DNA of 51,545 nucleotides from Macrostomum lignano (taxonomy: Eukaryota), in contig NIVC01001869.1 in NCBI GenBank assembly GCA_002269645.1, forward strand, positions 1 to 51,545, written 5' to 3'. Below are positions 11,148 to 51,545 of this stretch, in pieces. Below the pieces are notes generated by a model. That model searched no databases, was not told where the DNA came from, and saw nothing but the letters and a program-made list of their open reading frames with translations. Each line of letters begins with the position of its first letter. Position 1 is the stretch's first letter. Position numbers and translations under genes: made by a program.

Positions 11148-11929
<782 letters not shown>

Positions 11930-13522: not shown

Positions 13523-13606
<84 letters not shown>
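13510..13606. repeat. (CT)n microsatellite
   Basis: Dinucleotide run. Confidence 0.97.
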
Positions 13607-13609
<3 letters not shown>

Positions 13610-16080: not shown

Positions 16081-16533
16081 TGTGGCAGAGTAGTTTTATA
16101 TACCAAGTACACTCCTTTTTTCTGCTAACAGTCAAAAACTGCTCAATTGCGCATGTTAGTTTTAAGCAAAAGCAGAAGCCACTGATCCATTTGTCTGCCT
16201 TGCACAATAAAACCCCGCCTTCCAAAATCTCGCCGGTCTTAGTTGTTTAATTAATTAAAATCGGGACTGAGCTCACCAGACCTGCCGTTTGGCAGTCGTT
16301 TATAGAATTTGATAGCTGAGCCTCCGCACCCCCAGCCTGTCTAAAAATAGGAGCAGATCAATAAAAACAGACAAATGCAATTAATGCCCGAGCCAGAGTG
16401 CCTAGGTTTGCATTACAGAACAGTTTCTGGGTAGAAATGCAATCGATTTGATTTTTGTCGTGTTCAATGAATTTGTTTTAGTGCGTTTTTTGTTTTAAAC
16501 GATCGTTAAATTAGTTAATGTGCGAGTAAGTAC

Positions 16534-17290: not shown

Positions 17291-18006
17291 TCGGTGAGAA
17301 CCGCCTCAGCTAACTCCCTGTCAAGCGCTTTTCTACGCCATCATCGGGAGTCTGCGACCCCCCCCCCACATCAACCACACCCCCACCGCGCCCGCAATTA
17401 CAAGGTCGGCATATCAAAGGCGAGCACCAACCCCCTCACCCCAAGCAGTATCGGATTTCATCTTTTAGAAGCAGTTGGACGCAACTCAGAGTTTGAGTCG
17501 ATTGGAACAAGAAAGAGTGACGTAGAACTCAGCTTTGTTGTGGGTTTTGTACACTGGCCAACCGCCAGTTTTCAGAGAGCCTCCTAAAGGCCTTTGTTGA
17601 CCGCTCATGCCCTGTCGTCTTCTGGCGGTTCCTTTCTTGTTGTTGATTTTTTGCAAGAGACTCTGCAGTCTCAACCCCTCCCCCGGTTTGCTTTGCCTCT
17701 CGTTCGCCAGAGTTCTTTTTCTTCCTCTGAAGAATTAAAAAAAACTTCGACTATTTTTCTGGTTGTTGATTACGTAATCAAAAGAAAATGTTAAGGAAAT
17801 TCCCTTGAAGGAGAATCCTCGTGGCTATAGCCAAGCAGAGTAAGAAACGGTCGAACGCTAAATGGACAAAAACATTCTAGTAGGAAATCTTCAGTTTTTT
17901 AGGAAGCCCCTCTTTGTTGTTGTGGCAGAGCGGGGCTTCAAGCGAAGCTGAGTTTGAAAACAGGGGAGGTGAACCTTGACCCCGGCGCTGACCAACAGTT
18001 TTTAAT

Positions 18007-22765: not shown

Positions 22766-25700
22766 GTGAGTTCTGACGGCTGCCTGCGAGAGATTGGGAA
22801 ATGGCATTCCGCTGACACCTGATAGTGTACGCCTGGCATGTACACTATCTGTGCCTTGGGGGCTGGCCCTCATGGCCCTCAGGACCAACCCACAAAGGCA
22901 CAGAGTCAGGACCGCTGTACACCCTGTGTGAGCGCGTGTTCTGTGTTCGGAACGACTGTCGCCCCCTCCCTCGTCCTCCAGTCCTGCTGCCGCCCTCCAT
23001 CACGCGCCAGCCGGCCGCTGAGACGCCGTTCATCCCGGGGGAGCCGATCCGGCTGGACTGCGATGCTTCACCGCCTGGCAGCGTCGAGTTCGCCTGGCTG
23101 CGCAACCGGGAGACGCTCAGCCTGCGGGACGGCCGTCGGCTGGCTGGCGGCGCTCTGATCATTGAGTCGCCGACGTTAGCGGACGAAGGTGTCTATCAGT
23201 GCCTCGCTGGCAACCGCTTCGGCTGGGCGGCCTCCCGGGTGTCGCAGGTCCGTCAGGCCGTTCTGCGGCCGTTCCCCAACGCCAGGAAGCCTCCGATTGA
23301 AAAACTGGTAGGCGACAGCCTGCGCATCCCATGCGAGTCGCCAGTCTCGTACCCGACCGCCACAGTGCTGTGGTACAAGACTGACGATCTGACCAACCGG
23401 CTGAGCACCCTGCCGATGTCTAACCGGATTGCCATTCATCCTACTGACGGTTCGCTTCTATTCGCCAATCTGCTCCTGGAAGACGGCAACGCTGGCTACC
23501 AATGCGGCGCTAGAAACGATTTTGTCAGGCGAACAGTTGAAAGTCGAGCGCACCGGCTCATCGTTCGACAGGGCGGCGACAGTTCGACAAAGCGACGACC
23601 GGCCGAGCTGATGGCCCAGAGCGACTCGCGACCGCAGCTGCTGGCCAACAGCACCGGCGATCTGTTCTGCTTCTTCAGCGGCTACCCGACCCCGCAGATC
23701 CGATGGCGTCGACCGGTTGCTGACGGCTCGGACCAGCTGCTCGAGGCCGGAACCCGCCTTCAGCTGCTCTCCGTTCGGACGAAAACTCACGCCGGAACCT
23801 TCGAGTGCTTCGCTGTGAACGGCGGCAGCAGCGCACCGGCCTCCGCTAAGTTTCAAGTAGCCGTCGTGTCGCCGCCCCGATGGCTCGATCGGCCTGAAGG
23901 CGTCGCCCTGGCCGAGGGCGCGGCCAGGCACGAGTTCCGCTGCCGGGCCGAGCCGATGGACGGCCAGCCCAGCTGGTTCGTCAACGGCCGCCCGGTTCAG
24001 CCGACGAATCCTTCGGAGCTGCACCGGCTGATCTTCGAGAACCTGACGGCGGCCGACTCGGCCATGGTGCAGTGCAAATGCAGCAACTCGCACGGCTACA
24101 TTCTGGCCAACGCGCACCTGAGCGTGCTAAACCAACCGCCAGCGTTCACAGAGCCGCCGCCGCCGGGCGGACTGAAGACCGCGGCCGGAGTTGCCAAGCT
24201 GGTCATCCCGTGTCGGACGTTCGCGGCGCCTAAACCGGACATCTGGTGGAGCCGCGACGGTCAGCGGCTGGACGGGGACTCCGGCCGCTACAGCCTGGAG
24301 CAGAACGGCGACCTAGTGATTCGTGACGTCCAGCTGTCCGACGCCGGCCGCTACAAATGCCTGGCCAGCAACCGGTTCGGCAGCAGCGAAGCAGAGTCCA
24401 GCCTGACTGTCCGCCAGCCCACCGAGATCCGCATCCCGCCGGAGTCGCAGACAATTGTCGAAGGCGCCGAAGTTCGCCTCGCCTGCACGGCTGTCACGGA
24501 CGTTGGCGAGGCTGGCAGCCTTCGGCTGACCTGGCTGAAGGACGAACAGCCGGTTGACTTCGGCAGCCGGCCGGGTCTGCTGCACAGCGGTCAGCACGAC
24601 GGCGCTTTGGTGATCTCGCGGGCCCGACCGCAGGACAGCGGCGTCTACTCGTGCAACGCCAGCAACGGGCTGGACTATGACGTCAAGAGCGCCCGCCTGG
24701 TGGTCACGGGCCGGCCCGGCGCGCCCGCCGATTTACGAGTCGCCTGCGACACGCCGGCTGCCAAGGCGACGCTCCGGTGGACAGCCGGGCCGGACAATAA
24801 CTCGCCGGTGCGGCGACACATTGTCGAGTTTGCGACGCAGTTCGACGATCACCTGTCGGGAGTCTGGCGCTCGGCCGAGTTGGCTTCGGCGGCGACAACG
24901 GCAAACTCGGCCACTGTCCGGCTTCGTCCGAATCTTTTATATCGATTTCGAGTCCGAGCTGTGAACGACGTTGGGCCGGGCGACGCCTCCGAGGTTGTCG
25001 GCGCGCCGCCAAACTGTCGGGTGCCGCCCGACCGACCCGCCGTCAATCCCGACGGTCTCCGGGCGGAGGGCAGCCGGCCGCACAGCCTGACAGTCCAGTG
25101 GCAGCCGCTGTCACCGCTGGACTACGGAGCGGACGGCCTGGCGTATGTTCTGCAGCTGCGGTGCATCGACTGCGCTGGGACGCCGATTAACCGCCCGTTT
25201 GAGAAGATCGTGTCGGATCCTAAAGTCGATCAAGTCGACATTGTCGAACTGATCATAGACGGTCGCTCTTATCCGGTAGAAATTTACCGGCGCTATCTGG
25301 TGACGCTCGTTGCTAGGAACTCGCTGGGTGACTGTCGGGAGCGACCAGCTGAAGTTCTGGGTTATTCTGGGAGCTGCAGCCGCTGGTGGCACCAAGCGAC
25401 CTTCGGGTGGCCACGGAGTCCGCGGACGCCGTTGCGGAGAATTCGGCTGTGCTAGCTTGGTCGCTTGGCATCGACCCGACTGTGGACGATAGGGTGAGTG
25501 AGGTTGCTTGGCTCGGGAATGCACTTTTAATTCAGGAATCCGGAAAAAATTTTTAAGAATCCGAAAACTTTTCTAGAAAATCCCGAAAAGTTTTTTTATG
25601 AATCCCGGAACTTTTGCAAGAACCCTGATACTTTCTTAAGAATCTCAAAATCCCGAAAAATTGATACATGTAGATCGTTAAATTTTTCAAGAATCTGCGA

Positions 25701-27238
25701 ACATTTCCAAGAATCCAGTAGCTTTTACTGGAAGATTTGTAGTTTGAATTATTTACTCAGCTTGCTCAATTAATCAGCTACTCAGCTACTCAGCTACTCA
25801 GCTACTCAGCTACTCAGCTACTCAATTACTCAGCTACTCAGCTACTAAGCTACTCAGCTACTAAGCTACTCAGCTACTCAATTACTCAGCTACTCAGCTA
25901 CTCAATTACTCAGCTACTCAGCTACTCAGCTACTAAGCTACTCAGCTACTCAGCTACTCAGCTACTCAGCTACTCAATTACTCAGCTACTAAGCTACTCA
26001 GCTACTCAGCTACTCAGCTACTCAGCTACTCAGCTACTCAGCTCATCCCCTCACGCCTCCCACACGCCGCTCAGGTCCGCGGTTTCTACCGCGGCTTCCG
26101 CATCGAGTGGTGCGCATGGAACTCCAGCGAGGCGGGCTGCGCAGCTGGTCTGAACCGGTCGCAGGACGTCATCTACCGGGAGGCGCCGGTTTCAGGCTCC
26201 TCTTCCGCTTCATCATCATCAGCAGCATCGTCTACATCGACCCTCTCGCTGCCGCTGCAGTTCAAGGAGCGGCTGTTCCGCCTTCCGGGAGACACGAGCA
26301 TCCAAGCGTGGGTCCGCCTGCTCAACAAGCGCTACGCCGGCCCGCCCAGTGAGGCCATCGAGTTCCGCACTCTGGAGGGCACGCCAGGTCAAGTGAGCGA
26401 GTTTGTGCTCAGCCTGACAGGTGTTAATCATTTGGAGTTCGGCTGGTCGCCGCCGCAGCAATGCAACGGCCGCTTGACTGGCTACCAGTTGGCCTACCAG
26501 GAGATCCGCGAACTGCTGCAGGCCGACATTGTCTACACGCCACCAATCAATGACCCGTCGCAACGTCGCGGTCTGATCGCTGGCCTGAAGCCGAACACCA
26601 ACTATCGGGTGTACATCTACGCTCGAACAGCCAAAGGCAACGGTGAGCCAACGTTCCTGGACGTCAGGACGGCTCCGCCCAGCAGAGACTGGCGAGGCGG
26701 CGGACCGTTCACGGTAATCCCCGTCGGTGACCGGGCGTTGAACGTCACCTACAACCCGGGCACCGGGTCGCGATCGATGTTCTATGTGCAGTACCGCGAG
26801 TTGCAGGATGCGAAGTCGCTGGAGCCAAAGCAGCACGAAGAGCAGCAGGAGCAGCAACAGCAACAGCAGCAGCAGCAGCAGCAGAAACAGCAGAAGCAAC
26901 AGCAGCAGCAGCAACCGGCCCCTCCGCCACCGCCAGCCTGGCTGGAGACCAAACGAGAGCTGCAGCGACGCTGGATTCTCATCGACAACTTGGCCAGGAA
27001 CTCCTGGTACGAGGTGCGCGTCATCGCGTCCGAGGATGGCGCCGCGGCCGCCTCCTACACGGAGCCGGTGCGGGCAAGGACCGGGTCGAACCGGCGGCTT
27101 GGCGGCGGCCTGCTGGATGGCGCCGGTTCCACCTGGCTGGTGTGCATGTCCCTCATCCTGCTGGTAGTGGCCGTGTTCCTCCTGTTCATGTGCTTCGTGC
27201 GGCGGCGGCGGGGACGGCCGGAGTACCGTAAGTGATGC

Positions 27239-31998: not shown

Positions 31999-32596
31999 CC
32001 TTGAAATAAATAAACAATAGAAATAAAACAATTGTTTTAATTGACCAAGCAAGAGTTTATAATAGTTTTTTTGCCATTTTACTAATATAATTAAACCAAA
32101 CAAGTGACAAATACAAACTACATTGAATTTTATAATTGCCAAAAGCAAACATCGCACACACACAGCAGGAGTGGAAAGCGGGCGGGACAGAGTCAAATGC
32201 CAGTAGTATATTACTTATAAGTAGCATAGCTGGATCATTCAATCCTGCTATGTTTCGACGGATTTTAAACATAACCAACAGTATACGGAAACTGCTGTAC
32301 AGTTTTTAATCTGGGAGTGGGCTTTGCAACAAAAAAGCACAAAGAAAACGGTACATACTACTTACTATAAACGTTAATGCATCAAACAGATATGCGTTAA
32401 CATCATATACACTTAAATACGATGTATACATAACAATGTGTATTATACTGCAACAATGCCGCTATAATGCAATTTACACATCAAATCAATTTTTAATATG
32501 CTGCTTATAGTAGTATTCATGCCACAATGGAGTAGCACTGATAAGCCACATCTAATCATTAGTTTATCACATATCGAATTACTATCTACGAGTACC

Positions 32597-33285
32597 CCAT
32601 ATTTAATCAGTATCTATCATATATCTAATCATTATCTATCCGATATATCTAATCATTAACTATCTCATATGTCTAGTCATTATCTATCCCATATATCTAA
32701 TTATTATTTATCCCATATATCTAATTATTATCTATCCCATATATCTAATCATTATCTATCCGATATATCTAATCATTAACTATCTCATATGTCTAGTCAT
32801 TATCTATCCCATATATCTAATCATTATCTATCCCATATATCTAATTATTATCTATCCCATATATCTAATCATTATCTATCCCATATATCTAATCATTATC
32901 TATCCCATATATCTAATCATTATCTATCCCATATATCTAATTATTATTTATCCCATATATCTAATTATTATCTATCCCATATATCTAATCATTATCTATC
33001 CGATATATCTAATCATTATCTATCCCATATATGTAATCATTATCTATCCCATATATCTAATCATTATCTATCCCATATATCTAATCATTATCTATCCCAT
33101 ATATCTAATCATTATCTATCCCATATATCTAATCATTATCTATCCCATATATCTAATCATTATCTATCCCATATATCTAATCATTATCTATCCCATATAT
33201 CTAATCATTATCTATCCCATATATGTAATCATTATCTATCCCATATATGTAATTATTATCTATCCCATATATCTAATCATTATCG
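32597..33285. repeat. 24-bp AT-rich minisatellite ATTATCTATCCCATATATCTAATC, about 28 copies
   Basis: The period equals the 8-aa repeat of the spurious ORF 32789-33328. Confidence 0.96.
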
Positions 33286-33933
33286 ATCCCCAAATCTACT
33301 TACTATGAATCTTGTATCTCATAATTAATACACCACCTCCTATGATACACAAGATGGCAAGTTATTTACAAAAAATGTAACTTTCTCACTACAGTGAACA
33401 AGTACCAGTTAATATAAAAAAATTTCTACCTTAATTTTTGGAATAATGGGATTTTAGGTTGACTAACACAGGGCTGCAGGCACGCAAGTATATGGAATAT
33501 AATTGAAAAAAACGAAATTAAGCCGGAGAAAGGAATAACAGAGTTGAAACAAATAATAAAACAATTTAAGTGACTGCAATTAGTGAGTCAATAAAAATGG
33601 CTAGCTAGATGGGAACAGGGAACATAATGAAGAAAATAAAATAAATTTGTTTTCTCAAACAACTTTCAAAGTTTACTAAACGCAAAGATTATTAAGAAAC
33701 AACGCGCAAAAATAAATCTGCACATTTCAAACTTAAAGACTACTCACAAGTAGAAACGAAGGAAAACACATTCTACACAATCAGTAGCAGTTAGGCAAAT
33801 GTTTTAAAAAATGATTGATAATAAACAATGAAATTAATAACTTTTTCAGTAGGAAGAGGCACGAATTAAAAACTCAAATGTCGAATGTCGGATAAGTCCT
33901 ATTGATCCCCTGGTTAAAAGTTAATTTCACAAC

Positions 33934-34550
33934 CTATCAATATGCCATTTCCTAAATCTATCAATATGCCATTTCCCAAATCTATCAATATGCCATTTCC
34001 CAATCTATCAATATGCCATTTCCAAAATCTATCAATATGCCATTTCCAAAATCTATCAATATGCTATTTCCCAAATCTATCAATATGCCATTTCCCAAAT
34101 CTATCAATATGCCATTTCCCAAATCTATTAATATGCCATTTCCAAAATCTATCAATATGCCATTTCCCAAATCTATTAATATGCCATTTCCAAAATCTAT
34201 CAATATGCCATTTCCAAAATCTATCAATATGCTATTTCCCAAATCTATCAATATGCCATTTCCCAAATCTATCAATATGCCATTTCCTAAATCTATCAAT
34301 ATGCCATTTCCCAATCTATCAATATGCCATTTCCAAAATCTATCAATATGCCATTTCCAAAATCTATCAATATGCCATTTCCAAAATCTATCAATATGCT
34401 ATTTCCCAAATCTATCAATATGCCATTTCCAAAATCTATCAATATGCCATTTCCAAAATCTATCAATATGCCATTTCCAAAATCTATCAATATGCCATTT
34501 CCAAAATCTATCAATATGCCATTTCCCACATCTATCAATATGCCATTTTC
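33934..34550. repeat. 24-bp minisatellite CTATCAATATGCCATTTCCAAAAT, about 26 copies
   Basis: Regular period with single-base indels. Confidence 0.96.
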
Positions 34551-34747
34551 CTACCTATTACAACAGACACCAATACAGCACAGCAAGACAGACAATATTA
34601 AATAATAATGTTAATTAATTAACAAACAGAAATTTACATTGAAGCACACAGTACAAGCACACAAGGGTTAGTGATCGAGGCGCTACAGAGTGTCTGTAAT
34701 GTTAAATTACTATAGATAACAGGTAATGCAATACTAGCATACGAACG

Positions 34748-35020: not shown

Positions 35021-38000
35021 CTGGGTTGGGGTGAGCGAATAAACAATTGGTCAATAATAATCCAACTAAACTGCCGCTGATTAGGTAGGAAACCACCTTT
35101 TCTAAGAAACATACACTGCAATTTCTAGGAAACAAAATCTGACCTTTCTCTGAAACGGAATACTGCTTTATTTGAAGCCACTTTCTAAGAAACAGAACCC
35201 ACCGTTTCTAGGAAACAGAAAGTACCATTTCTGCGAAAAATAAAGTGCAATTTAAAAAATAGAAACTGTTATATCTATGAAACAAATACTACCAATTCTA
35301 GGAAAATAGAGACAGCCATTTCTAAGAAACAGAGCCCACAGATTAATAAAATAAATAGATGGGCCACTCAGGCATATATACTTAGTAAAACAGCTTTCGA
35401 CTTCAGTTCAGTAGCAAAGAAGAATACATAAGCTATTTCATAAGAATAAAGCCAGCTGAAATGACTTTGATAAGTTTAGAAGCCCAAGTTTGCAGGCGTA
35501 AACAGCTTGCTAATTGGTTCAGCAATAATGTACATTATCCAGTCCACTGAAATGTACATGGCAGCTTTAAGCTGGAATTCCGAGAAAGGCAATAAAAATT
35601 GGGGCTTGGCGGGGGGGGGGGTAGTGTGGAAAGGCGCGGTTGGAAGGTTTAAGCTGGGACCTGGGGGTAAAAACCAATAAATGTCTTGGCTTTAAAAATA
35701 CATTTAAATGCTTCTGTTTAACTTACTACTGAACTGAAAGTAGCTTACACGCAAATATTTTCTGAGAAAAAAACGCATTTTCTCAGAAACGGAAACCCGC
35801 TTTATTTGGAAATACCATTTCTGCGAAAGAGAAAGTGCAATTTAAAAAACTGTCATTTCTATGAAACAAAATCTGTCATTTCTATGAAACAAAATCTGCC
35901 ATTTCTAGGAAACAAAAACAGCCAATTTTGAAAAGAAGACACTACGAATTTTCTAAGAAACAGTCGTCACCCTTTCTAAGAAACAGAAGCTAACATTTAT
36001 GATAAAGAATAACTATCTTTTCGGATCAATCCTAAACAAACGACTCGTTTATATATCCATTCCAGGAAACAGAAACGGTCGTTTCTAAGAAACAAAATCA
36101 AACTTTTCTTGGAAACAGAATCTACTGAACTCAGAAAACAATAAAACTGTCATTTCTTTAGGAAAATTCCAATTCTCAACCGCGACAAAAACACAAACAA
36201 ACAAACAAACAAGCATTACAAACCCGTTGCAAACAGCTGACAATGTGAGCCAGGTCAATCCATGGATAGGCACCGCTGGGGTCGGTCTGGTGAAAGACGA
36301 AATCGCGGAAAAGTTTCAGCATGTACCGATCGCCAGTCTCGGCCCAGGCCGGATCTGCCGGCAGCTCCCGCTCGCAGACAGTGTTCAGCTTGCTGGCCAG
36401 CCTGAATAAGCGGCCGTTTTCTAATTGTTTGGTCAGTTGAGCTTCCAGAAAGTCCACGCGCTGCTGCGACTCGCACAGGTGATCGAAAAATCGGGCACCA
36501 ATTGCGGGCATCACGTCGTAGATTGATCTGAGTGGGCGGCGAGTCACTCTGTAGCTGATTGGGTCACTCTGTAGCTGATTGGGTCACTCTGTAGCTGATT
36601 GGGTCACTCTGTAGCTGATTGGGTCAACCTGTAGCTGATTGGGTCAACCTGTAGCTGATTGGGTTACTCTGTACCTAATTGGGTCACTCTGTAGCTGATT
36701 GGGTCACTCTGTAGCTGATTGTGTCACTCTTTAGCTGATTGGGTCACTCTGTAGCTGATTAGGTCACTCTATAGCTGATTGGGTCACTCTGTAGCTGATT
36801 GGGTCACTCTGTAGCTGATTGGGTCACTCTGTAGCTGATTAGGTCACTCTGTAGCTGATTGGGTCACTCTGTAGCTGATTGGGTCACTCTTTAGCTGATT
36901 GGGTCACTCTGTAGCTGATTGGGTCACTATGTAGCTGATTGGGTCACTCTGTAGCTGATTGGGTCACTCTACATATAGCTGATTGGGTCACTCTGTAGCT
37001 GATTGGGTCACTACATATAGCTGATTGGGTCACTCTGTAGATGGTTTGGGTCACTCTGTAGATGGTTTGGGTCACTCTGTACCCCATTTAACACACAGTA
37101 GAGTGGAAAAAACACAATGCCAAGCTACAAACCTGCTCAAACCATAAATTAGCTGCCTTATAACCGAGGCCAGATCTTTCGAATAGGCCCTAGTAATGAG
37201 TTCAATTGACGTATTCAAATCTTGCAAAGCAACAGTAGTACCACAGGACAATACAAGCAATAATTTTCCCAGGTCAACCAAATCCTGCTGTTTAGCCTTG
37301 ACTAATTCCTCTTCAGCTTGGGCTGGATCACTGAAACTCGCGCCAATAGCGCCTAGAATTTCTCTGGCGCCCAGACAGTTCACTCGCAGTCTTGGCCGCT
37401 GCTGTTGACCAGCTCTAGAAGCTTCCACATCGATAATTATCTTAGACGGGTCCAACAGTCGGACAGCCCGACTGTGCCTGGCGTGACAGGCCCTGACAGC
37501 GCTGGCTAGCTGCAGCAGCATGTGCCACACAATCGCTTCGGATTGAACGTGCGATTGCGAACGAGATTTAATAGACGATATCGGCCGGGCTTGACCGTCG
37601 ATATTGAAGGGAGAATTGAAACCGTTCACTTTTAACGGGTCAGAGCAGTGCGACGATAGCAGGGTGGTGCTGCCGGGGAAGAAGTCCGTTACTAGGCACA
37701 CCTGGGATCGGGGATGGGAATGTGCGGAGAGCATGCTGGTTATCAAGGGGTCCTCGAACAATAATGAGAGAAAGAGAGAAGAAAGGGGAGAGAGGAAGAC
37801 AGGATGTAGGAAGCTAGGGATATGGAGCTGAAGAGTCCAGGGAGATGGGAGAGGGATCGTGGGAGAGATATAGATAAGAGAAGAAAATAGAAGAAAGGTA
37901 GAGTAGGAGAGAGATGAGAAGGGTAGAGGGATATGAGAGGGGATCGATAGAGATAAGAAGAAGAAAGGGAGATTAGAGCAGCAGAGATGAGAGGGCGAGA

Positions 38001-41000
38001 AAGAGGGGAGAGGAGAGAGAGGGAGAAGAGAGCTGAGAGAGAGAAAGAAGAGAGGTGATAGAGGGAGATGAGAGCAGTCACACGAGATAAGAGGGGGAGA
38101 GAGGGAGAAGAGAGCAGTAGAAATGAGAGAGGAAGAGAGCAGTAGAGATGAGAGAGGAAGAGAGCAGTAGAGATGAGAGAGGAAGAGAGCAGTAGAGGTG
38201 AGAGAGGAAGAGATTAGTAGAGATGAGAGAGGAAGAGAGCAGTAGAAGTGAGAGAGGAAGAGAGCAGTAGAGATGAGAGAGGAAGAGATTAGTAGAGATG
38301 AGAGAGGAAGAGAGCAGTAGAGATGAGAGAGGAAGAGAGCAACAGAGACAGCAGACACAGCAGACCAAAATGCCAGAAGAAGCAAGCCAGCAAATTACCG
38401 AATCGTCTCCAAACGCATCTGTGGCAAAGACGTGGCGCACCGGCACCAGATGAGGATGCTCCAGTTTGCGCAGCGACTCCAGCTGCTGGCCAACTAGCCT
38501 AGCTTGCATCTGGCCAACTCCAACAAATCGTCTCAGCATAACCCAGGTCTGATCCTTGCCATTGAACGCTTTATAGCACAGGCTGGGCAATCCGAAAGTA
38601 CCAGACCGTTTCAACTGAGTCTCCAACGGTGCCAGCTGCTCGTAGTGCAGCAGAGCCGGCGGCAAAGTCGCCGACAGTTGAGCATCGGGAACAATCAGCG
38701 CGAAGTGAATCCGACTTAGAAGGCTGCGCCTCAACTCGGCGTCCATATAAGTGACACCGTCGCCGCGTTCGGTGAACTGCGAGAATTCACCGGCCGGTAA
38801 CTGGGCGTACCAGCTGGGCGAGGTCAGTTTGCCGGCGCTTTGCATTTTTTTCACTTCGTCCAGATTGTTGGCGTCGTAGAAACTGGTGCCGGCTACAAGT
38901 GACGCCGTTTGAGATCGATTGGCCGCTGCGGTTGCTGCCGCTGATATGGCCTTTCATTCGTGTAGGATGAGTTTCATATCGCTATTTGCCCAACGGCAAG
39001 CCTAACTTTAGTGGGGATTCCCCTATTGCGATGCTGGCTGGCATTCCTTCATTGGTTTTTTGGATCAGAAAGAATCCTTTTTGGTAAATGGAAATTTCCC
39101 TTGGTTTATGCATTAGGGAATCCACTTTTATTGGGTAAGATACTATTTTGAGGGACTTCCGGGAATCCCACTTCATTGGGTGGTATTTTCCTTAATTGAT
39201 ATTGAGGGGATTCCCCGTTATTTGGTGGGATTTTCCTTAATTGATATTGAGGGGATTCTTCGTTATTTGGTGGGATTTTCCTTAATTGATATTGAGGGAA
39301 TCCCCGATATTTGGTGGGAGTCCCCTTAGTTAATATTGAGGTAATCCCCCGTTATTTGGTGGGATTTTCCTTAGTTGATATTTACATAATCCCCCGTTAT
39401 TTGGTGGGACCCCCTTAGTTAATATTAAGGGAATTCTCTGCTATTTGGTGGGATTTACGTTAGTTGATATTGACATAATTCTCCGTTATTTGGTGGGATT
39501 CCCCTTAGTTAATATTAAGGGAATTCTCTGCTATTTGGTGGGATTTACGTTAGTTGATATTGACATAATTCTCCGTTATTTGGTGGGATTCCCCTTAGTT
39601 AATATTAAGGGAATTCCCCGCTATTTGGTGGAATTTTCCTTAGTTGATATTGAGGTAATCCCCAGTTATTTGGTGGGATTCCCCTTATTTTATATTGAGG
39701 GAATTCCCCTTCATTGGGTGAGATTTCCGATAGTTTTTATTGAGGGAATCCCGGAAATCCCCCTTGATTGGGTGGGATTTCCCTTAGTTTATATTGAAGG
39801 AATCCTATCAAAAAGCAGAATTTTGAGAATGGGTGCAATATTCCAAAATGGAATCTAAGAAATCCTGCTATTTGTAAAATTTAGCAAGTTATTTTCTAGC
39901 TCTCACGTGCTGCCCAGTGATTAGGCTGCGCGAGTGCTGCGGCGTCATGCCCATGCCGTGCATTCGAACGCCAAGCGCCGCCGCCGCAGTCGCGCCGCTA
40001 TTGCTGGCGTACTGCGTCTGCGACTGCCCTGTGGCACTGCGCGATTGAGCCTGCAAAAAAGTCAGCGAGTTCAATAAATTAAATGGGATTTAATTATTGA
40101 TTATACATATTGAGATTAAGCGCTACTAACCTACTCTTAGTAGAATATTAACAGGATATTTAAAAAATGAATTCAGCCGTTAAAGAATTTTCATTGTCTA
40201 TGGCCAAAACTATGGTCAAATTTCACACAATACGCTAAAATTAAAGTAGGTAAAGTTTACTTGCTTGCTTCTAATTAATTAGTAAAGCAGAAAAATAGTA
40301 CATTACGATTTGCGCTATAAAAACAGGTCGAGATTTTCACCCCCATATGGAATTAAGAATAAACAACAGGCATTTAACTCAATGTACACGAATGAACGCA
40401 AGACTGAAGAAACTCAGCCTAGGGGGGCAGGCTCAAACTAGCTCAGCCAATGAGAGAGCAGTAAGGAGAGAGGTCAAAGTAAGACGGACGAAACAGTAGG
40501 CCCAATCTGGTTCAGCCAATGAGAGTGCAGTAAGGAGAGAGGTCAAAGTAAGACGGACGAAAAAGTAGGCCCAATCTGGCTCAGCCAATGAGAGCGCAGT
40601 AAGGAGAGAGGTCAAAGTAAGACGGACGAAAAAGTAGGACCAATCTGGCTCAGCCAATGAGAGCGCAGTAGGGAGAGAGTTCAAAGTCAAGACACAAGCG
40701 GGCAAGAGGAAAGCCAAACCGTTTTCGGCATGGCTGGGGTACTAGCCCTTTTCTCTCTTGCTCGTTATTCGCGCGCACTGGATTTGCTTTTCAAGTTTTT
40801 CTGTAATATTCCACACTGGCACAGGGAGTGTACAAGCCTGACGATTAGAAAATCTAAAAAGGACCGCTGTACACCCTGTGTGAGAGTGTAGATAAGTGTA
40901 TGACTGCGTACAATATTGGCGCACTTTTATGTGCTGGGGAGTCAGCAGTATGGGCAGAATTGCCACAGCACTGTGTGTGGTACAATGTCGCCTTGCAGAG

Positions 41001-44040: not shown

Positions 44041-46693
44041 CGAAAGTTTTAAATAAGTTTCATAGAAACTAACGTACTAAAGTAAAATGTAGCGCAAAAT
44101 GTATAAAAAAAATAAATATTTAGATCATGTTTTAAATATAAAATTAAATAACTTTTTTGAGTTCCTTTAAACATTTGCAGAAATGTATTTTTAAAGATAG
44201 CAATTTTTTAATTTACAATACCGTTCTATTTTGCCGGCATCTCAAAACATAATTTATAGCGTAAAGTCTACTTAATTCGACAGTTAAAAGTTTGACCATT
44301 TATCTAATTTATATATATTTAAAAAGTTATGATGGGATTTTATTATGAGCTAGTAGTGCTAAAAGTTAGGTAAAATTACTATGTATGCATATGCAATGCC
44401 TAGCTAACTAACATTTCGTAGATAAATCTGCAGCAGCAAAAAGCTTGTTAGGCCCTAGGCTGTTTCGCATATATACGTCTGTTTGACATTGGACCTGCTA
44501 ACTTTTTTGCCCCTGTTTATGTTATGTAGAGAGAGTAAGAGACCTTATCGGTTGTATAGACTATATGAAGTTTTATTTTATTTGACTCAATTTCAATAAA
44601 GCTAAGTTTTTCTCATTTCTTCTGATCAAAAGGTTGATGGCCAGCTTTTTTCAAGGAATATTTCAAAATGTGTAAGTAAAATTTTATAATTTTTTACTAT
44701 TGAATTACATACTACTGTTAATGTTAATCATTCAGTTTAATTAATGATAGGTTTGAATTGAAATTAAAAAATTTTAGGGGGCCTAGGGGACTAACTATAT
44801 GGCGAAATCCAAAAACGTGGGATAAAATGCTAAAACAAATCTGCGGACATTCGACGGAAAGTAATGTATCTAAAAAAGGTTTTTGAAAGATAGATAGGTC
44901 TTTAAAAATAGTTCTAGATAAAAACTATTGTTTTCATGTTTTATATTGTTGAATACTAACTACTGAATTCACCGGCTGTTTGGTTCACCGGATTTTTAAC
45001 TTTATTTTTAAGGCTTAAAAATATACATAATCAATAACGCAAGTAAAACTAGAGATGCGCCTAGATTTTTGGCTCTGCGCGTTGCCCCTGGACATCAGGA
45101 GGGCGATTTTTGTTATTTTTTGGGGGGTGAAACCGGCGGTGAACCCAATAAATCCTTCCAGAGAGCTGAAAACCTGTCATGCAATATTTCAAAGCAAAAT
45201 ATAGGCAGATTTCGACGTGCGCATAAAATTTCTGCGTTGCTCCTGAACTGCAGGAGAACGTTTCTTGTTAAATTCCGGTGTTGAATGACTGCCGCTGAAC
45301 TCCGCGGTGAACGAAATTAAGTGCGAAAAATAGTAAATTTTCCTATTAAAAAAGTTATCAAAGTAAAGTTTTATCACTTTCATCAGCATTTTTGCTCTCA
45401 CTTTTGTGTTGACTGTTAAGCTATTTATTTTAATGCAAAGCAAAAATATTAAAAAATATTTCGAACTGCGAGTCTTTATTGTGCAACGTGGCAGCAGGCA
45501 GTTACAGCGCACTTGCGCATAAAAAATACATTATATTTATATGCCATGTGGTATTTTTGTGGCCATACTTAATAATGAAGCCTTTTATGCTGTTTTACTT
45601 CCTATATTTTTAGATTTATTTTTCAATTATGTCTTGAAACATGCAGTCAAAGTGTTAATATCAGTATAGGCAATAAAATAAAATTGGCATTTCTTGGCTT
45701 GATGCTTTTTACAACTTGTTAAAACCTCTATTTTAATATTTCTTCTCTTCTAATAAGTCAAATTATAAACATAATATCTATTTAAGATTCCATAGTGCTT
45801 TTCCATTAAGTATAAATTCAATTATATCAGGTAGGCACTTAGTATACTTTTATAAAATAATAACTATAACATGCAGTAAAAATATTGACTATATACATCA
45901 AGAATTATTGATTTTTCTTGATTTGTAAATAAAAATATTACTCTGCAATTTCCAATATTTTTCATGTATTTTATGTAAAATGCGCAATTTCATGTGTTTT
46001 TTGTGTTTTCATCAGTTTAGCTTGGGCTAACTAGAAACTGCAGACTGACAGAATGCATTTCTTTCTCCGGGATATTGCTTCTTTCTAAGTTAAAGAGACC
46101 AATATGCTCATTAGGAGTAGCTTTATGCCCAGAAGCATAGTACGCACAATAAATTGTGTTTTTGTGTTTCCATTAGTTTAGCCTGTTATTGGGCTTTCTA
46201 GAAACTGCAGACTGACAGAATGTATTCCTTTTATGGATATTCCTCGTGTTGCTGAATTGTTGACATCAATGTTGTCACAAGCGATTTTTTGTCGTGCCAT
46301 TGTCAAAATTGGCAATGTTGTTGCAACAACATTGATACATCTTTACTACTTTACTATGAGTAGTGCAGCGAGAGTTGTGAATGAAATAAAGTAATTTAAT
46401 TAGTTGTAATTTTATGTAATATTATATTTTTTGTGTTTCCATCAGTTTAGCCTGTTATTGGGCTATCTAGAAACTGAAGACTGACAGAATGTATTCCTTT
46501 TTCAGGGATACTGTTTCTTTCCAAGTTAAAGAGACGAATCTGCTTCATACCAACGTCTTTATCGCTAAAATCACAGTAACACAATAAATTTGGAACCCAC
46601 TTTCCCTTTTTACTCGCGTTTATTAATGATGCGTACACTGTTTTCGAAGCGCAAGGTCCTCTACCTGCGAATGCTGCTTTTTGTCGGCGTTTG

Positions 46694-46990
46694 AGTTGAG
46701 GCTACTGATGTTCAAGAAGCGACAGCTCTAGGACCAGATGGACAAGATGTCTATGCCACATTTCCTACTGCGGAAGTGAAAAAGTACGAGGATTTGATCA
46801 AGAAGTTTGATGTCTACTGCCAGCCTCTCTCCAACGAGACATTTGAAAGCTATCAGCTGCGCACCAGAATGCAAGGAGAAGCAGAGGACTTCGACCAGTT
46901 CATGGGTTCTCTATGCCAGCTCGTGAAGCACTGCAACTACAGCAAACCTGACAATGACGAGATCAAGAACAGCATCTTCGATATCTTTGA
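46694..46990 (+). pseudogene. Ty3/Gypsy-type gag fragment inside the foldback element
   Basis: GPDGQDVYATF...KYEDLIKKFDVYCQPLSNETFESYQLRTRMQGEAEDFDQFMGSLCQLVKHCNY resembles the Gypsy capsid pattern F..YC.P..N...E.Y.F..R.Q...E..D.F...L..L...C. Truncated at both ends. Confidence 0.75.
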
Positions 46991-46994
46991 TAGC

Positions 46995-48115
46995 TTACAG
47001 CCTGGCCTTCTGGCTGTTGGGGTGAAGCGCGAGAAGCGTGGGCCCGCTCACAATACGCCCGAAGGTTCTTGGCCTGGTCTAGCGCGCGCTGGATCAGGCC
47101 GGACCTCCGGGTGCTCCTGGCGGGTCTGCGATTGCGATTTCCGGTTTCAGCAGCGCGAACTGCCCTACCAGGCATAGGATCGGCCGTTTGCCTCGGCTTC
47201 TTTGCTGGAGGAGCCTGGGCCCCAGTTCCGGTTTCGGAAGCCTTGGCATTCTTGGCTTCATCAGCTTTCCACTCCTCGCAACGGAGGATGGTCAGCTGAG
47301 TCAAACCAATATGGATTGTGGACTTAGGCGGCAAGTGCTCAGCCCAGTCATTAGAGAGCCCTAGGATCACTGTAGCCCCCTTCTCCTTGCGGGAAGTGGC
47401 GTGGTGTAGGAGCCCGTTGACCTCAAGGTCAGGGTGCAGCTTTAGCAATATTTGCCTAAGCTGATCTCCGGACTTAATGGCACTGCCGGCCGGGATCCAG
47501 ACACGAAAGGGCTGGCGAAGACATGCTTGCCAAGCTTCTTGGGCCAGTTCAGCTTTGGCAGAAGCTCGCGTATACTGCGGCTGCTCTCCTCCGAGCTGCA
47601 CCAGATGAAGATGCAGCCGTCGGTCTTGGCGGACTTGACCACGCTCACAGGGCGGCCCGCCAGGAGCTGGTCAATGAGCGCAGCATCGATGGTGCGCCAG
47701 GCACTGTCGAGCTCGTCGTCCGTGAGGTCTTGCTCTTCCCCGAAGATGATGACTGCCGGTTGGAGCTTGACCTTTGAGGTGTAATTAGTGTGGCGGTTCC
47801 CCAGCTCACCAGCGGGGGTTGTATCCTTGGGGGCAGGGGTTGCTGTGGCTCCTTTCGGGCCAACAGCAGCCTCGTCCTCTCTAGGTTCCCCCTCTGCCGG
47901 TAGTCAGCCCGCAGTCGCCATTTCCGCTCATTGCGGCATTGGTTGCGGGCGCTTCGGGCTTCAGCGGAGGGCCCGGTTGCGCGTGCGGGCATGTCACCGG
48001 CCGAGCCGGCGGCAAGCCCATCTGCCCCAAGTGGGGCGGCACTCGTGCCAGAGTCACCGGCCGGAGTTGCCGGGGCCCCGGCTTCAGCGGGGGTTAAAGA
48101 GCCGAATGACGCCAT
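46995..48115 (-). pseudogene. Frameshifted gag-like ORF1 of a non-LTR retrotransposon (DUF4780-like, R1/Loa type)
   Basis: ATG at 48115 and an Ala/Pro/Gly-rich N-terminus. Across frameshifts it then reads YTSKVKLQPAVIIF...IDAALIDQLL...DGCIFIWCSSEESSRSIRELL...FRVWIPAGSAIKSGDQLRQILLKLHPDL...GATVILGLSNDW...IHIGLTQLTI. The DUF4780 resemblance is recalled, not searched. Confidence 0.5.
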
Positions 48116-48154
48116 AGCTGAAAGCTATGAGATGAGGATGAGATGAGGCACAGT

Positions 48155-48751
48155 GCTGATGAGATGAGACACTTCGCTTCGCTGAAGGCCATCTTGCATT
48201 TTGCATCCCAGTTCCATGGCGTGTCCTTGCGCAGGAGCGCTGTTAGTGGCTCGGCAATGTGAGACAGGTTCTTGATGTAGAACTGGAAGAACTTTGCAAA
48301 GCCAAGGAATGAGGCTAACTTTGCCGTATTGGTGGGTGCCTTGAGTCCCGATACGGACTCGGTGTGCGACTGGATAGGTTGAATTCCCGCTGCGCTGACG
48401 CGGTGTCCAACGAACTCGATCTCCGACGCCTTGAAGGTTGCACTTCTTGAGGTTGACAGTTACTCGATGCTGCAGCAGCTTGTCCAGTACCTGAAGTACG
48501 CGACTTTCGTGCTCAGCTTCAGTACCGGCATGAATGGCAATGTTGTCTTGATAGTGAACGACGCCTCTGATGCCTTGGAGGATCTTGCCGACGACCTTCT
48601 GGAAGGCCGCCGGATCCGAGCTGATGCCGAATGGCATGCATCTGAAATGGTAGAGGCCGAATTCGGTGTGGAAGCAGGTCAGATTCTTGGCGTCATCGTG
48701 CAGAGGCAGCTGTAGATACGACTGGTTGAGGTTGATTTGTGAGAAAAACTT
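48155..48751 (-). pseudogene. Ty3/Gypsy reverse transcriptase fragment, inactivated
   Basis: FFSQINLNQSYLQLPL...FHTEFGLYHF / MPFGISSDPAAFQ...YQDN...NLKKC / IEFVGHRVSAAGI...SFLG...LSHIAEPLTALLRKDTPWNW. Two frameshifts, and the catalytic YxDD is changed to YQDN. Confidence 0.9.
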
Positions 48752-51545
48752 CGAATTGTAAACCTCAAATATATTACTAATTTAAAATTTTAAAACACGT
48801 TTCCATTCTTTTGAATTAGAATAGCAGGTATGTTCAGAGCTAAAGTAATTCTGGTTTAACAATTTTATGCCTTACTTTATTTCATTCACAACTCTCGCTG
48901 CACTACTCATAGTAAAGTAGTAAAGATGTATCAATGTTGTTGCAACAACATTGCCAATTTTGACAATGGCACGACAAAAAATCGCTTGTGACAACATTGA
49001 TGTCAACAATTCAGCAACACGAGGAATATCCATAAAAGGAATACATTCTGTCAGTCTGCAGTTTCTAGAAAGCCCAATAACAGGCTAAACTAATGGAAAC
49101 ACAAAAACACAATTTATTGTGCGTACTATGCTTCTGGGCATAAAGCTACTCCTAATGAGCATATTGGTCTCTTTAACTTAGAAAGAAGCAATATCCCGGA
49201 GAAAGAAATGCATTCTGTCAGTCTTCAGTTTCTAGATAGCCCAATAACAGGCTAAACTGATGGAAATACAAAAAACACAATTTATTGTGCGTACTGTGCT
49301 TCTGGTCATAAAGCTACTCCTAATGAGCATATTGGTCTCTTTAACTTAGAAAGAAGCAATATCCCGGAGAAAGAAATGCATTCTGTCAGTCTGCAGTTTC
49401 TAGTTAGCCCAAGCTAAACTGATGAAAACACAAAAAACACATGAAATTGCGCATTTTACATAAAATACATGAAAAATATTGGAAATTGCAGAGTAATATT
49501 TTTATTTACAAATCAAGAAAAATCAATAATTCTTGATGTATATAGTCAATATTTTTACTGCATGTTATAGTTATTATTTTATAAAAGTATACTAAGTGCC
49601 TGCCTGATATAATTGAATTTATACTTAATAGAAAAGCACTATGGAATCTTAAATAGATATTATGTTTATAATTTGACTTATTAGAAGAGAAGAAATATTA
49701 AAATAGAGGTTTTAACAAGTTGTAAAAAGCATCAAGCCAAGAAATGCCAATTTTATTTTATTGCCTATACTGATATTAACACTTTGACTGCATGTTTCAA
49801 GACATAATTGAAAAATAAATCTAAAAATATAGGAAGTAAAACAGCATAAAAGGCTTCATTATTAAGTATGGCCACAAAAATACCACATGGCATATAAATA
49901 TAATGTATTTTTTATGCGCAAGTGCGCTGTAACTGCCTGCTGCCACGTTGCGCAATAAAGACTCGCAGTTCGAAATATTTTTTAATGTTTTCGCTTTGCA
50001 TTAAAATAAATAGCTTAACAGTCAACACAAAAGTGAGAGCAAAAATGCTGATGAAAGTGATAAAACTTTACTTTGATAACTTTTTTAATAGGAAAATTTA
50101 CTATTTTTCGCACTTAATTTCGTTCACCGCGGAGTTCAGCGGCAGTCATTCAACACCGGAATTTAACAAGAAACGTTCTCCTGCAGTTCAGGAGCAACAC
50201 TGAAATTTTATGCGCACGTCAAAATCTGCCTATATTTTGCTTTGAAATATTGCATGACAGGTTTTCAGCTCTCTGGAAGGATTTATTGGGTTCACCGCCA
50301 GTTTCACCCCCCAAAAAATAACAAAAATCGCCCTCCTGATGTCCAGGGGCAACGCGCAGAGCCAAAAATCTAGGCGCATCTCTAGTTTTACTTGCGCTAT
50401 CAATTATATATATTTTTAAGCCTTAAAAATAAAGTTAAAATCCGGTGAACCAAGTGCCAGTGAATTCAGTAGTTAGTTTGTTGAATAAATAAGAAAAAAC
50501 CACAAAAAAGCATTTTGAAAGTCCAAGTTGACCGATTTGCAATTTTTTGTTTCACTTTTTTCATTATTAAACAATTAATTTTAAGACTTGTAGGCCTTTG
50601 AGAAGGCTAATTTTTTCACTACTTACAAAACAGAAAGTAATCTGTGTTTTACTTTTTATTCAATTCAAAAAGATGAAGTATTTCTAAGGATTTCAAAGTT
50701 TTTCTAAAACCATATAAACTTGCAAAAATTCATACTAATATAAAGTGCAAAGTTTGCCAGCAAACATCTTTCTCTAAAAGTAAATATATCGCTAATTCCT
50801 TGTTGCAAAATAATCTTTAAGTTGTTTTCTTTCATTTAAATATCAACTTGCATAGTATCAGTATTTGTAAAATGCCTATATTTAGACTTAAAAATTTTGG
50901 ATACAAATTGGTACCACAAAATGTGAACCCGGCATCCAAATCAGATGCTTTTTGTATGCTCATTAAGCGACAAAGAACAATGAAATTACACTAAAACATG
51001 TATCATCGCAGCGTGTATGCAGGAAAAAAAAGAATTTTCGAAATCACTTTAGTAAAAGCTGAGTAAAATGCAATTTTCCGATCCTTACAGGAATTTGTAT
51101 GTTTAAATAATAAACTTACGTTGAATACAATTTATTGCAAATGAACTCTACAAAATACACGTCAAGAGTAACGAAAGTGATAAACAAATAAACCCTTGAA
51201 AATAATGTTAAATATGTTGTAGAATTATAGAGTGTAACATTATAAGATAGTTAATAAAATACATTATTATAGCTTTTCTATCATTTTCATTAGACTATTT
51301 TAGGTCATAATTAAACTTACCATTTTAACAAATCATTTATTAAAAATAAAGCTATACAAAAATAATTTGTGCTTTATCAGACTTTTTTACCTTTAAAAAC
51401 TTGAATAAATTTATTTTATAGCTTTATTGCTTTCAAATTGCCAAAAAACGAATTTTCATACAACTTGCCCCGATTTTTGGATTTTACCATATCTTTCTAT
51501 TAGACTATAAAATCTAAACACTGTTTTAGGGCCTATAGGGTTATC

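What the first reader, a model, noticed from the sequence alone, without database searches (positions are those of the whole stretch)
46395..48871. Best candidate system: a DNA transposon packaging fragments of different retrotransposons (Pack-MULE-like mobile trap)
The 2.5-kb core holds a Gypsy gag piece (+), a non-LTR-type ORF1 (-) and a Gypsy RT piece (-). They abut each other with no LTRs, poly(A) tails or TSDs of their own, and the two Gypsy pieces face opposite ways. All three are crippled (frameshifts, YQDN), yet they were moved together. Plant Pack-MULEs capture gene fragments, and maize MuDR TIRs contain inward-facing promoters. By analogy, convergent or hairpin transcription here would give dsRNA or antisense RNA against at least two retroelement classes, a portable piRNA/siRNA source. 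The mundane alternative is nested insertions scrambled by deletions.
Basis: partly seen in the sequence, partly recalled or inferred. Interest (0 to 1): 0.8.

Follow-up and report, generated by a model that had tools for sequence, protein, structure and literature searches.

The report
Foldback transposon carrying scrambled retrotransposon scraps
A 5.5-kb non-autonomous "foldback" DNA transposon with 1.4-1.6-kb inverted arms and a 9-bp target duplication carries about 2.2 kb of broken retrotransposon pieces in its middle; this looks like ordinary transposon junk, and nothing shows it acts as a mobile silencing device.

Summary
Window 44955-50477 is one TIR element. Its arms are 1440 and 1606 bp and differ at 16 of 1438 aligned bases. 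The inner arm parts carry 168-bp tandem subrepeats. A perfect 9-bp direct repeat, TTGTTGAAT, flanks the whole element.

Between the arms lie three retroelement pieces:
- a Ty3/Gypsy gag fragment on the + strand;
- the 5' 85% of a non-LTR ORF1 on the - strand;
- the second half of a Ty3/Gypsy RT on the - strand, with YQDN in place of YLDD.

All three are broken. None has an LTR, poly(A) tail or TSD of its own.

The carrier matches the foldback architecture described for Tetris and Tm1: flanking domain, tandem repeats, inner domain, variable middle domain, 8-10-bp TSD. That TSD length suggests a Mutator/FB-type transposase.

The order and orientation of the pieces are what one ordinary nest would give: a Gypsy, a 5'-truncated non-LTR inserted in its pol in the same orientation, then one inversion and flanking deletions. 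Three separate captures are not needed.

The cargo probably arrived with the element. The other 46 kb of the window holds host genes and satellites but no retroelement coding remains. I could not test this directly because no other copies were reachable.

The proposed hairpin-dsRNA "trap" does not fit the anatomy. The cargo sits in the loop and has no internal complementarity. Small-RNA function is untested.

The parts
44946..44954 (.). Left target-site duplication TTGTTGAAT (10 bp if the ambiguous next A is counted)
   Evidence: Sequence read directly. It is identical to 50478-50486, with a chance probability of about 2e-5.
44955..45992 (+). Left arm, outer flanking domain. The tip is ACTAACTACTGAATTCAC. 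A GGTGAAC motif occurs three times in the outer 360 bp.
   Evidence: 14 of the 16 arm mismatches lie in the outer 530 bp.
45993..46231 (+). Left arm, about 168-bp tandem subrepeats, 1.5 copies
   Evidence: This arm has one unit fewer than the right arm.
46232..46394 (+). Left arm, inner domain (163 bp), identical to 48872-49034 in inverted orientation
46395..46590 (+). Start of the middle domain: a 33-bp AT-rich spacer plus a diverged third subrepeat copy (46428-46590, 83-96% identical to the arm units)
46591..47033 (+). Ty3/Gypsy gag fragment, about aa 20-165 of gag, with an in-frame stop at 46692-46694
47026..48124 (-). Non-LTR retrotransposon fragment: 9 bp of 5'UTR plus ORF1 aa 1 to about 438 of 506. 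There are two frameshifts (about 47870 and about 47508). The rest of ORF1, ORF2 and any tail are missing.
48125..48141 (-). 17 bp at the RT/ORF1 junction, part of a slip-like CTCATCTCATC repeat. This is either filler or the last Gypsy bases.
   Evidence: sequence read directly
48142..48785 (-). Ty3/Gypsy pol fragment, from mid-RT to the start of the RNase H linker. It has one frameshift at about 48440 and YQDN in place of YLDD.
48786..48871 (.). AT-rich unique end of the middle domain, with no match to anything
48872..50477 (-). Right arm: inner domain 48872-49034, 168-bp subrepeats 49035-49441 (2.5 copies), flanking domain 49442-50477
50478..50486 (.). Right target-site duplication TTGTTGAAT

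Best explanation
Window 44955-50477 is a non-autonomous foldback-type DNA transposon. It encodes no transposase.

Inferred mobilisation: a transposase supplied in trans recognises the arm tips and subterminal motifs and makes a 9-bp staggered cut, which suggests a Mutator/FB-type enzyme.

The middle domain holds a passive 2.2-kb remnant of an ordinary retrotransposon nest. The inferred history is:
1. A Ty3/Gypsy element was present.
2. A 5'-truncated non-LTR element inserted into its pol gene in the same orientation.
3. One inversion followed, with breakpoints in gag (about aa 165) and in the non-LTR ORF1 (about aa 438).
4. Deletions then removed the LTRs, the rest of pol and the non-LTR 3' part.

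The palindromic foldback structure is a plausible driver of those rearrangements. The scrambled block was most likely already inside the element when it inserted at this gene-bearing site. It has no demonstrated function. Any small RNAs it yields would be incidental.
For: Shown:
- Defined inverted termini and a perfect 9-bp TSD.
- Arms 98.9% identical, built as flanking domain / 168-bp tandem repeats / inner domain. This is the layout published for the foldback element Tetris, which has 8-10-bp TSDs (PMC4079207), and for Tm1, which has 9-bp TSDs (PMC3169594).
- No transposase-like ORF in the element.
- The identity of each cargo piece.
- The non-LTR similarity to L001 starts only 9 bp upstream of the ORF1 ATG and abuts the RT/RNase H-linker end on the same strand. 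This is the normal 5' junction of a truncated TPRT (target-primed reverse transcription) insertion into a Gypsy pol.
- The observed order gag[20-165](+), ORF1[438-1](-), pol[RH start to mid-RT](-) is exactly what one inversion predicts.
- Nested TEs inside foldback-like Galileo copies are documented (PMC2775673).

Supporting arrival with the cargo:
- No other retroelement or arm sequence occurs in the window.
- ORFs of 75 aa or more in the rest of the window give only host domains: Ig/FN3 and Pan3 pseudokinase.
Against: - No second copy of the family could be retrieved, so co-mobilisation of the cargo is unproven.
- Whether gag and RT come from one Gypsy element is unresolved. In polyproteins related to the gag piece, RT identity to the window is 28-36% against 29-38% for gag. 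That is about 1 SD lower than the control pairs and is not decisive.
- Five events (two insertions, one inversion, two deletions) are many for an element whose arms differ by only 1.1%, unless they predate the last transposition or arm homogenisation.
- The cargo carries 3 frameshifts and 1 stop in 2.2 kb. This is not significantly more damage than the arm indel rate predicts (P about 0.1), so relative ages are not resolved.
- The superfamily is inferred from TSD length alone.
Confidence: 0.58

Rival explanations
1. One-step transduplication. A double-strand break or stalled fork inside a foldback copy was repaired by copying a contiguous chunk of about 2.2 kb from an already scrambled TE nest elsewhere. 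This is the gap-filling / FoSTeST route described for animal Pack-TIRs. The chimera then transposed here. The cargo is non-functional.
For: - The pieces abut without LTR, poly(A) or TSD.
- Junction B (47026-47033) has no filler, and the two homologies overlap by about 8 bp.
- Only one event inside the element is needed, which fits arms that are still 98.9% identical.
- A Foldback element capturing foreign sequence in an animal is documented: Ssk-FB4 (PMC8277862).
- The cargo is the only retro-derived DNA in a genic 51.5-kb window.
Against: - No donor locus could be searched, so border microhomology cannot be scored.
- At 2.2 kb the cargo is far above the median captured length of 224 bp (PMC8277862).
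- The internal arrangement is equally explained by a nest formed inside the element lineage.
Confidence: 0.25
2. A Pack-MULE-like element has packaged pieces of several retroelement families and acts as a portable source of antisense, si- or piRNAs against them. Transcription would be driven by inward promoters in the arms or by a hairpin.
For: - The carrier is mobile and MULE/FB-like by TSD.
- The cargo covers two retroelement classes on both strands.
- The element sits near transcribed host genes.
- Pack-MULEs are reported to possibly encode small RNAs (PMC8277862 introduction).
Against: - The cargo lies in the loop, not the stem. The pieces share no complementarity with each other, so a hairpin transcript would give dsRNA against the foldback arms only.
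- The piece order is explained by one ordinary nest plus one inversion, not by selection of targets.
- No small-RNA, promoter or copy-number data are available.
- No Rfam family matches.
- Pack-TIR and Pack-MULE definitions require non-TE cargo.
Confidence: 0.05
3. In-situ nesting. The empty foldback element inserted here first. The Gypsy and then the non-LTR inserted into its centre at this locus, and were later scrambled and deleted.
For: - Foldback-like elements create local insertion hotspots and accumulate nested TEs (PMC2775673).
- The damage in the cargo is statistically compatible with the age of the arms.
Against: - It needs five events inside about 0.3 kb of target while 46 kb of neighbouring sequence took no detectable retroelement hit.
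- No TSD, LTR or poly(A) of the nested elements survives.
Confidence: 0.1
4. Not a transposon. The structure is a local inverted duplication or a palindromic assembly artefact around a TE remnant.
For: Long, near-identical inverted repeats can arise from foldback chimeric reads or from palindrome formation.
Against: - The arms differ by 16 substitutions, two 1-bp indels and one 168-bp unit.
- The ends are sharp and bounded by a perfect 9-bp direct repeat, with unique sequence on both sides.
- The spacer is 2.5 kb and asymmetric.
Confidence: 0.02

Closest known systems
Tetris foldback element of Drosophila virilis (PMC4079207)
   Same: - TIRs longer than 1.4 kb, built of an outer flanking domain, a variable number of tandem repeats of about 200 bp, and an inner domain.
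- A variable non-coding middle domain.
- No transposase.
- TSD of 8-10 bp.
- Tandem-unit number differs between arms or alleles.
   Different: - No sequence comparison was possible.
- The subrepeat here is 168 bp rather than 220 bp.
- The middle domain here is recognisably retrotransposon-derived.
- The host species is unknown.
Tm1 Mutator/Foldback family of Meloidogyne (PMC3169594) and the Drosophila FB / FB4 family
   Same: - Composite TIRs with internal repeats.
- 9-bp TSD.
- Mostly non-autonomous copies with a variable interior.
- FB4 is known to carry foreign cargo (Ssk-FB4, PMC8277862).
   Different: - Tm1 subrepeats are 13-15 bp.
- An autonomous partner with a MULE-like transposase is known for Tm1. 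None was found here.
Pack-MULE / Pack-TIR transduplicating elements (PMC8277862)
   Same: A non-autonomous TIR element with TSDs that carries foreign sequence between its TIRs. Gap-repair or template-switch capture is a viable origin.
   Different: - These elements are defined by non-TE host cargo with an identifiable parental copy, median 224-305 bp.
- The cargo here is 2.2 kb of TE fragments, and no parent was identified.
- The survey in that paper found no Pack-MULE in animal reference genomes.
Galileo (P superfamily, foldback-like) with nested TEs at D. buzzatii inversion breakpoints (PMC2775673)
   Same: Long TIRs with tandem repeats. Copies harbour nested insertions of other TEs, including a LINE-like fragment. 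The elements are associated with rearrangements.
   Different: - Galileo makes 7-bp TSDs, against 9 bp here.
- Its nested TEs keep their own TSDs and poly(A).
- Here all such hallmarks are gone and the pieces are inverted relative to one another.

Membership tests
Foldback-type TIR elements (structural class) | Very long terminal inverted repeats that make up most of the element | tested here: met
   Arms of 1440 and 1606 bp in a 5523-bp element, 98.9% identical
Foldback-type TIR elements (structural class) | TIRs contain internal tandem subrepeats, variable in number | tested here: met
   168-bp unit, 1.5 copies on the left and 2.5 on the right, plus a diverged copy at 46428-46590
Foldback-type TIR elements (structural class) | Variable middle domain, usually without coding capacity for a transposase | tested here: met
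   The only domain hit in the middle domain is RVT_1, and homology searches identify only retroelement fragments. No transposase domain was found
Foldback-type TIR elements (structural class) | Repeated family with several genomic copies at sites with different TSDs | not testable with these tools
   The source genome is not available. There is no second copy in the window. The metagenome scan gave only chance matches of about 20 nt
Mutator superfamily (MULE, including FB-like) | Target-site duplication of 8-11 bp, typically 9 | tested here: met
   Perfect 9-bp TTGTTGAAT, or 10 bp if the ambiguous A is counted
Mutator superfamily (MULE, including FB-like) | Mobilised by a MURA-type DDE transposase whose autonomous copies share the TIR tips | not testable with these tools
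   The window holds no transposase. An autonomous partner would have to be sought in the source genome
Pack-MULE / Pack-TIR | The internal sequence is non-TE host DNA | tested here: not met
   The cargo is Gypsy gag, non-LTR ORF1 and Gypsy RT. The definition is in PMC8277862
Pack-MULE / Pack-TIR | An identifiable parental copy elsewhere, not linked to the TIR element | not testable with these tools
   No genome to search. The nearest relative of the ORF1 piece is a 76-82% nt metagenome contig, which is not a donor
P-superfamily Galileo-like foldbacks | 7-bp TSD | tested here: not met
   The TSD is 9 bp
Hairpin-RNA / siRNA source directed at the cargo families | The target-derived sequence is present as an inverted duplication, so that it forms the stem | tested here: not met
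   No inverted repeats among the cargo pieces. Only the arms are complementary
piRNA-cluster-like TE trap | A dense array of nested TE fragments that produces small RNAs | tested here: inconclusive
   Only 2.2 kb of TE fragments sit in an otherwise genic and satellite window. No small-RNA data are available
Non-LTR ORF1 with DUF4780 | Pfam PF16012 match above the gathering score | tested here: inconclusive
   The window piece has no hit. The relative P0001 scores 16.2 bits against a cutoff of 24.5, E=0.008. The non-LTR origin is instead shown by the adjacent APE+RT ORF2 in L001

The most novel reading that the evidence does not exclude
An animal foldback (Mutator/FB-type) element has transduplicated a multi-family retrotransposon cassette and amplifies it as a unit. 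That would be a 'Pack-FB' whose cargo is TE-derived. Wherever it lands in transcribed chromatin, it would seed antisense or pi/siRNAs against a Gypsy and a non-LTR family, acting as a mobile trans-silencing locus.
Probability: 0.06. Interest if true: 0.75.

Novelty: new member of a known kind. Interest (0 to 1): 0.22.

Why it matters
As it stands, this is a well-preserved example of a foldback transposon. It has a full domain architecture, an intact TSD and a middle domain filled with retrotransposon debris. That makes it useful for TE annotation of the source genome and as a possible fragile site next to a PAN3-like gene.

It would matter more if genome-wide copies showed that the cargo is co-mobilised and produces small RNAs. 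That would extend transduplication in animals from host genes (Ssk-FB4) to TE-derived cargo, and would offer a mobile alternative to fixed piRNA clusters.

Tried and rejected
1. Other copies of the arms. None occur in the window (blastn with word size 9, and the TIR-tip pattern with up to 3 mismatches). blastn against the fetched locus file aligned only about 20 nt on two of them (L006, L007), so I treat all 7 as chance matches.

2. Exact look-up of 10 element and window ORFs in the 15-billion protein collection. None is present, so no contigs from the source organism could be pulled.

3. Word-indexed protein search with the RT piece. I set E<=1e-20, which was too strict. It returned one 33% hit, so there are no close relatives and no species clue. 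I used PDB instead.

4. Species identification from the Ig/FN3 exon. The best hits are 41% (unnamed Logan transcript-like contigs) and 34% (Mesocestoides 'neuroglian'). This is too distant to name the host.

5. Testing whether gag and RT come from the same Gypsy, by comparing gag and RT identities across 17 polyproteins against control pairs. The window differs by about 1 SD, which is inconclusive. GC3 values (0.56 against 0.66-0.69) are also indecisive.

6. Dating the cargo against the arms from indel counts. Not significant.

7. Each arm as a complete element, making this a composite transposon. Rejected, because the tip motif is absent from the inner arm ends.

8. Rfam scan of the element. 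No match.

9. Bacterial promoter/terminator scan. Not run, because it does not apply to a eukaryotic locus.


Full report
**What is there**

The finding's interval, 46395-48871, is the spacer between two long inverted arms. A gapped alignment of the arms defines the element as 44955-50477, or 5523 bp. The left arm is 44955-46394 (1440 bp) and the right arm is 48872-50477 (1606 bp). They differ by 16 substitutions in 1438 aligned positions, two 1-bp indels and one complete 168-bp unit.

Both ends start with ACTAACTACTGAATTCAC. This 18-mer occurs nowhere else in the window with fewer than three mismatches. Immediately outside the ends lies the same 9-mer, TTGTTGAAT, in direct orientation at 44946-44954 and 50478-50486. 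The chance probability at local base composition is about 2e-5. One ambiguous A could make it 10 bp.

This is the signature of a cut-and-paste TIR transposon insertion. It is not a palindromic artefact or a local inverted duplication.

**Arm architecture**

Each arm has three parts:
- an outer flanking domain of about 1 kb;
- a block of 168-bp tandem subrepeats, 1.5 copies on the left and 2.5 on the right;
- a 163-bp inner domain.

The motif GGTGAAC occurs three times in the outer 360 bp of each arm, spaced 155-168 bp apart. Six of the nine occurrences in the whole 51.5-kb window are there. These are plausible subterminal binding sites, but that is inference.

The layout is the foldback architecture described for Tetris in D. 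virilis. Tetris has TIRs up to 1735 bp, built of a flanking domain, about 220-bp tandem repeats and an inner domain. It also has a variable non-coding middle domain, 8-10-bp TSDs and no transposase (PMC4079207). The layout also resembles Tm1 of root-knot nematodes, which makes 9-bp TSDs (PMC3169594). Those authors, citing earlier work, place most foldback elements in the Mutator superfamily on the basis of TSD length and transposases. Galileo-type foldbacks of the P superfamily make 7-bp TSDs (PMC2775673) and are excluded here.

**The cargo**

The first 196 bp of the 'core' (46395-46590) is a 33-bp spacer plus a diverged third copy of the arm subrepeat. The last 86 bp (48786-48871) is AT-rich and matches nothing. 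Between them lies a GC-rich block of about 2.2 kb made of three pieces.

1. gag, + strand, about 46591/46640 to 47033.
   - Pfam finds nothing.
   - An exhaustive HMMER search gives 854 relatives at E<1e-3, the best at 3e-17 and 48% identity.
   - The long relatives have RVT_1, then RT_RNaseH, then Integrase_H2C2, then rve. This is the Ty3/Gypsy domain order. They match the query at their N-terminal residues 50-200.
   - tblastn places the homology at gag aa 20-165, with an in-frame TGA at 46692.

2. Non-LTR ORF1, - strand, 48124 to 47026.
   - The only database relative is P0001, at 68% identity.
   - P0001 is the ORF1 of metagenome contig L001. It is followed directly by an ORF2 with Exo_endo_phos_2 and RVT_1 domains, so it belongs to a non-LTR element.
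   - The window copy covers ORF1 aa 1 to about 438 of 506, read in three frames because of two frameshifts.
   - Similarity to L001 starts only 9 bp upstream of the ATG.
   - DUF4780 is only a sub-threshold hit in P0001.

3. Gypsy pol, - strand, about 48785 to 48142.
   - RVT_1 positions 67-205 of 205 match at E=1.3e-16, with one frameshift.
   - The best PDB match is Ty3 RT at E about 1e-24. YQDN aligns with YLDD.
   - The piece ends in the RT/RNase H linker.

The core has no A or T run of 7 or more, no LTR-like direct repeats and no inverted repeats among the pieces.

**How the cargo is organised**

Read on the minus strand, the pol fragment ends at the RT/RNase H boundary. After 17 bp of slip-like CTCATCTCATC sequence, it is followed by the non-LTR starting 9 bp before its ORF1 ATG, in the same orientation. 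This is what the 5' junction of a 5'-truncated target-primed insertion into a Gypsy pol looks like.

The other end of the non-LTR is broken at ORF1 aa about 438. It is joined, with no filler and about 8 bp of overlapping homology, to gag aa about 165 in the opposite orientation.

Take a Gypsy with a same-orientation nested non-LTR and invert the segment between a break in gag and a break in ORF1. The predicted result is gag(5' part, +), ORF1(-, 3' to 5'), pol(-, from the insertion site back toward gag). That is the observed order and orientation. Two flanking deletions, or one excision of this chunk, then remove the LTRs and everything else.

So the opposite orientation of the two Gypsy pieces needs only one inversion of an ordinary nest, not independent packaging.

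Whether gag and RT really come from one element could not be settled. Relative to 17 polyproteins, the window's RT identity is about 1 SD lower than its gag identity would predict. GC3 is also indecisive.

**Did the cargo travel with the element?**

No direct test was possible.
- No second copy exists in the window.
- The metagenome scan gave only chance matches.
- The window's ORFs are not in the protein collection.

The indirect evidence favours co-arrival. The remaining 46 kb contains no sequence similar to the cargo, to Gypsy polyproteins or to the non-LTR ORF1 and ORF2. Its ORFs of 75 aa or more hit only host domains:
- an L1CAM/neuroglian-like Ig/FN3 gene at 22.8-27.2 kb on the + strand;
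- a Pan3 pseudokinase gene at 36.2-38.9 kb on the - strand.

The locus is genic and rich in satellites. It is not a TE graveyard. Five successive events confined to the few hundred bp at the centre of a young element would be surprising in situ.

The damage in the cargo, 3 frameshifts and 1 stop in 2.2 kb, is not significantly more than the arms' own indel rate predicts. Ages therefore do not discriminate. A one-step gap-repair or template-switch copy of a pre-scrambled nest remains a serious rival. That route is documented for animal Pack-TIRs and for Ssk-FB4 (PMC8277862).

**The proposed function**

Pack-MULE and Pack-TIR elements are defined by non-TE cargo with an identifiable parent (PMC8277862). 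That feature is not met here, so the element works partly like a Pack element, in that foreign DNA sits between mobile TIRs, but it is not a member of that class.

The hairpin-dsRNA idea does not fit the anatomy. In a read-through transcript the 1.4-kb arms form the stem and the retro pieces form the loop. The pieces cover non-overlapping gene regions and share no complementarity. Any hairpin siRNAs would therefore target the foldback family itself.

Antisense or piRNA production from the loop cannot be excluded, but nothing here supports it. No Rfam family matches. Eukaryotic promoters and small RNAs cannot be assessed with these tools.

**Verdict**

This is a new member of the known foldback class, Mutator/FB-like by TSD, with a middle domain made of a scrambled Gypsy and non-LTR nest. 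The 'transposon carrying retro fragments' reading is partly supported. The 'mobile trap' mechanism is unsupported, and for the hairpin route it is contradicted by the structure.

Noticed in passing
window 44955-46394 vs 48872-50477: 15 of the 16 arm-to-arm substitutions are transitions, 6 of them at CpG sites. 14 of the 16 lie in the outer 530 bp. The inner 900 bp is almost identical between the arms. This suggests deamination-type decay where CpGs are concentrated, or conversion/homogenisation spreading from the hairpin centre, or both.
   Followed up: partly
window 44983, 45138, 45306 and mirror sites 50444, 50290, 50122: GGTGAAC (extended C[CG]GGTGAAC) occurs three times per arm, spaced 155-168 bp apart, which is the same period as the inner 168-bp subrepeats. 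These are candidate subterminal transposase-binding sites.
   Followed up: partly
window 48125-48175 (- strand): The sequence around the RT/non-LTR junction is a local slip-like repeat (GTGTCTCATCTCATC / GTGCCTCATCTCATC / CTCATCTCAT). It may be junction filler or replication slippage.
   Followed up: no
window 22816-25452 and 25937-27232 (+): Two large GC-rich (about 65%) exons of an L1CAM/neuroglian-like gene. The first holds at least 5 Ig domains and an FN3. The second holds an FN3, a poly-Q stretch and a transmembrane segment. The best named relative is only 34% identical (Mesocestoides 'neuroglian'), so the host species stays unidentified.
   Followed up: partly
window 36179-36583 and 38081-38953 (-): Exons of a PAN3-like gene (Pan3 pseudokinase domain, E=3e-40). 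The foldback element lies 6-11 kb beyond its 5' side, either upstream of the gene or in a 5' intron.
   Followed up: no
window 2616-3100, 7976-8770, 10996-11950, 12458-13174, 14335-16200, 16381-17300, 17884-19400, 25706-26100, 32474-33421, 33850-34628, 40429-40693: An unusually dense set of micro- and minisatellite arrays, with periods of 8, 34, 8, 16, 10, 12, 32, 8, 24, 24 and 69 bp. Several produce long spurious ORFs.
   Followed up: no
window 4129-4235 and 13485-13613: Two simple-repeat blocks about 100 bp long that are reverse complements of each other (95-99%), 9.3 kb apart.
   Followed up: no
L001 (JGI metagenome 3300038379, contig Ga0394873_0103931) 521-4146: An apparently intact non-LTR retrotransposon, with a 506-aa ORF1 and an APE+RT ORF2 cut by the contig end. 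It is 76-82% identical at the nucleotide level to the window's ORF1 fragment. This is eukaryotic TE DNA inside a metagenome, from a related host or a related TE lineage.
   Followed up: partly
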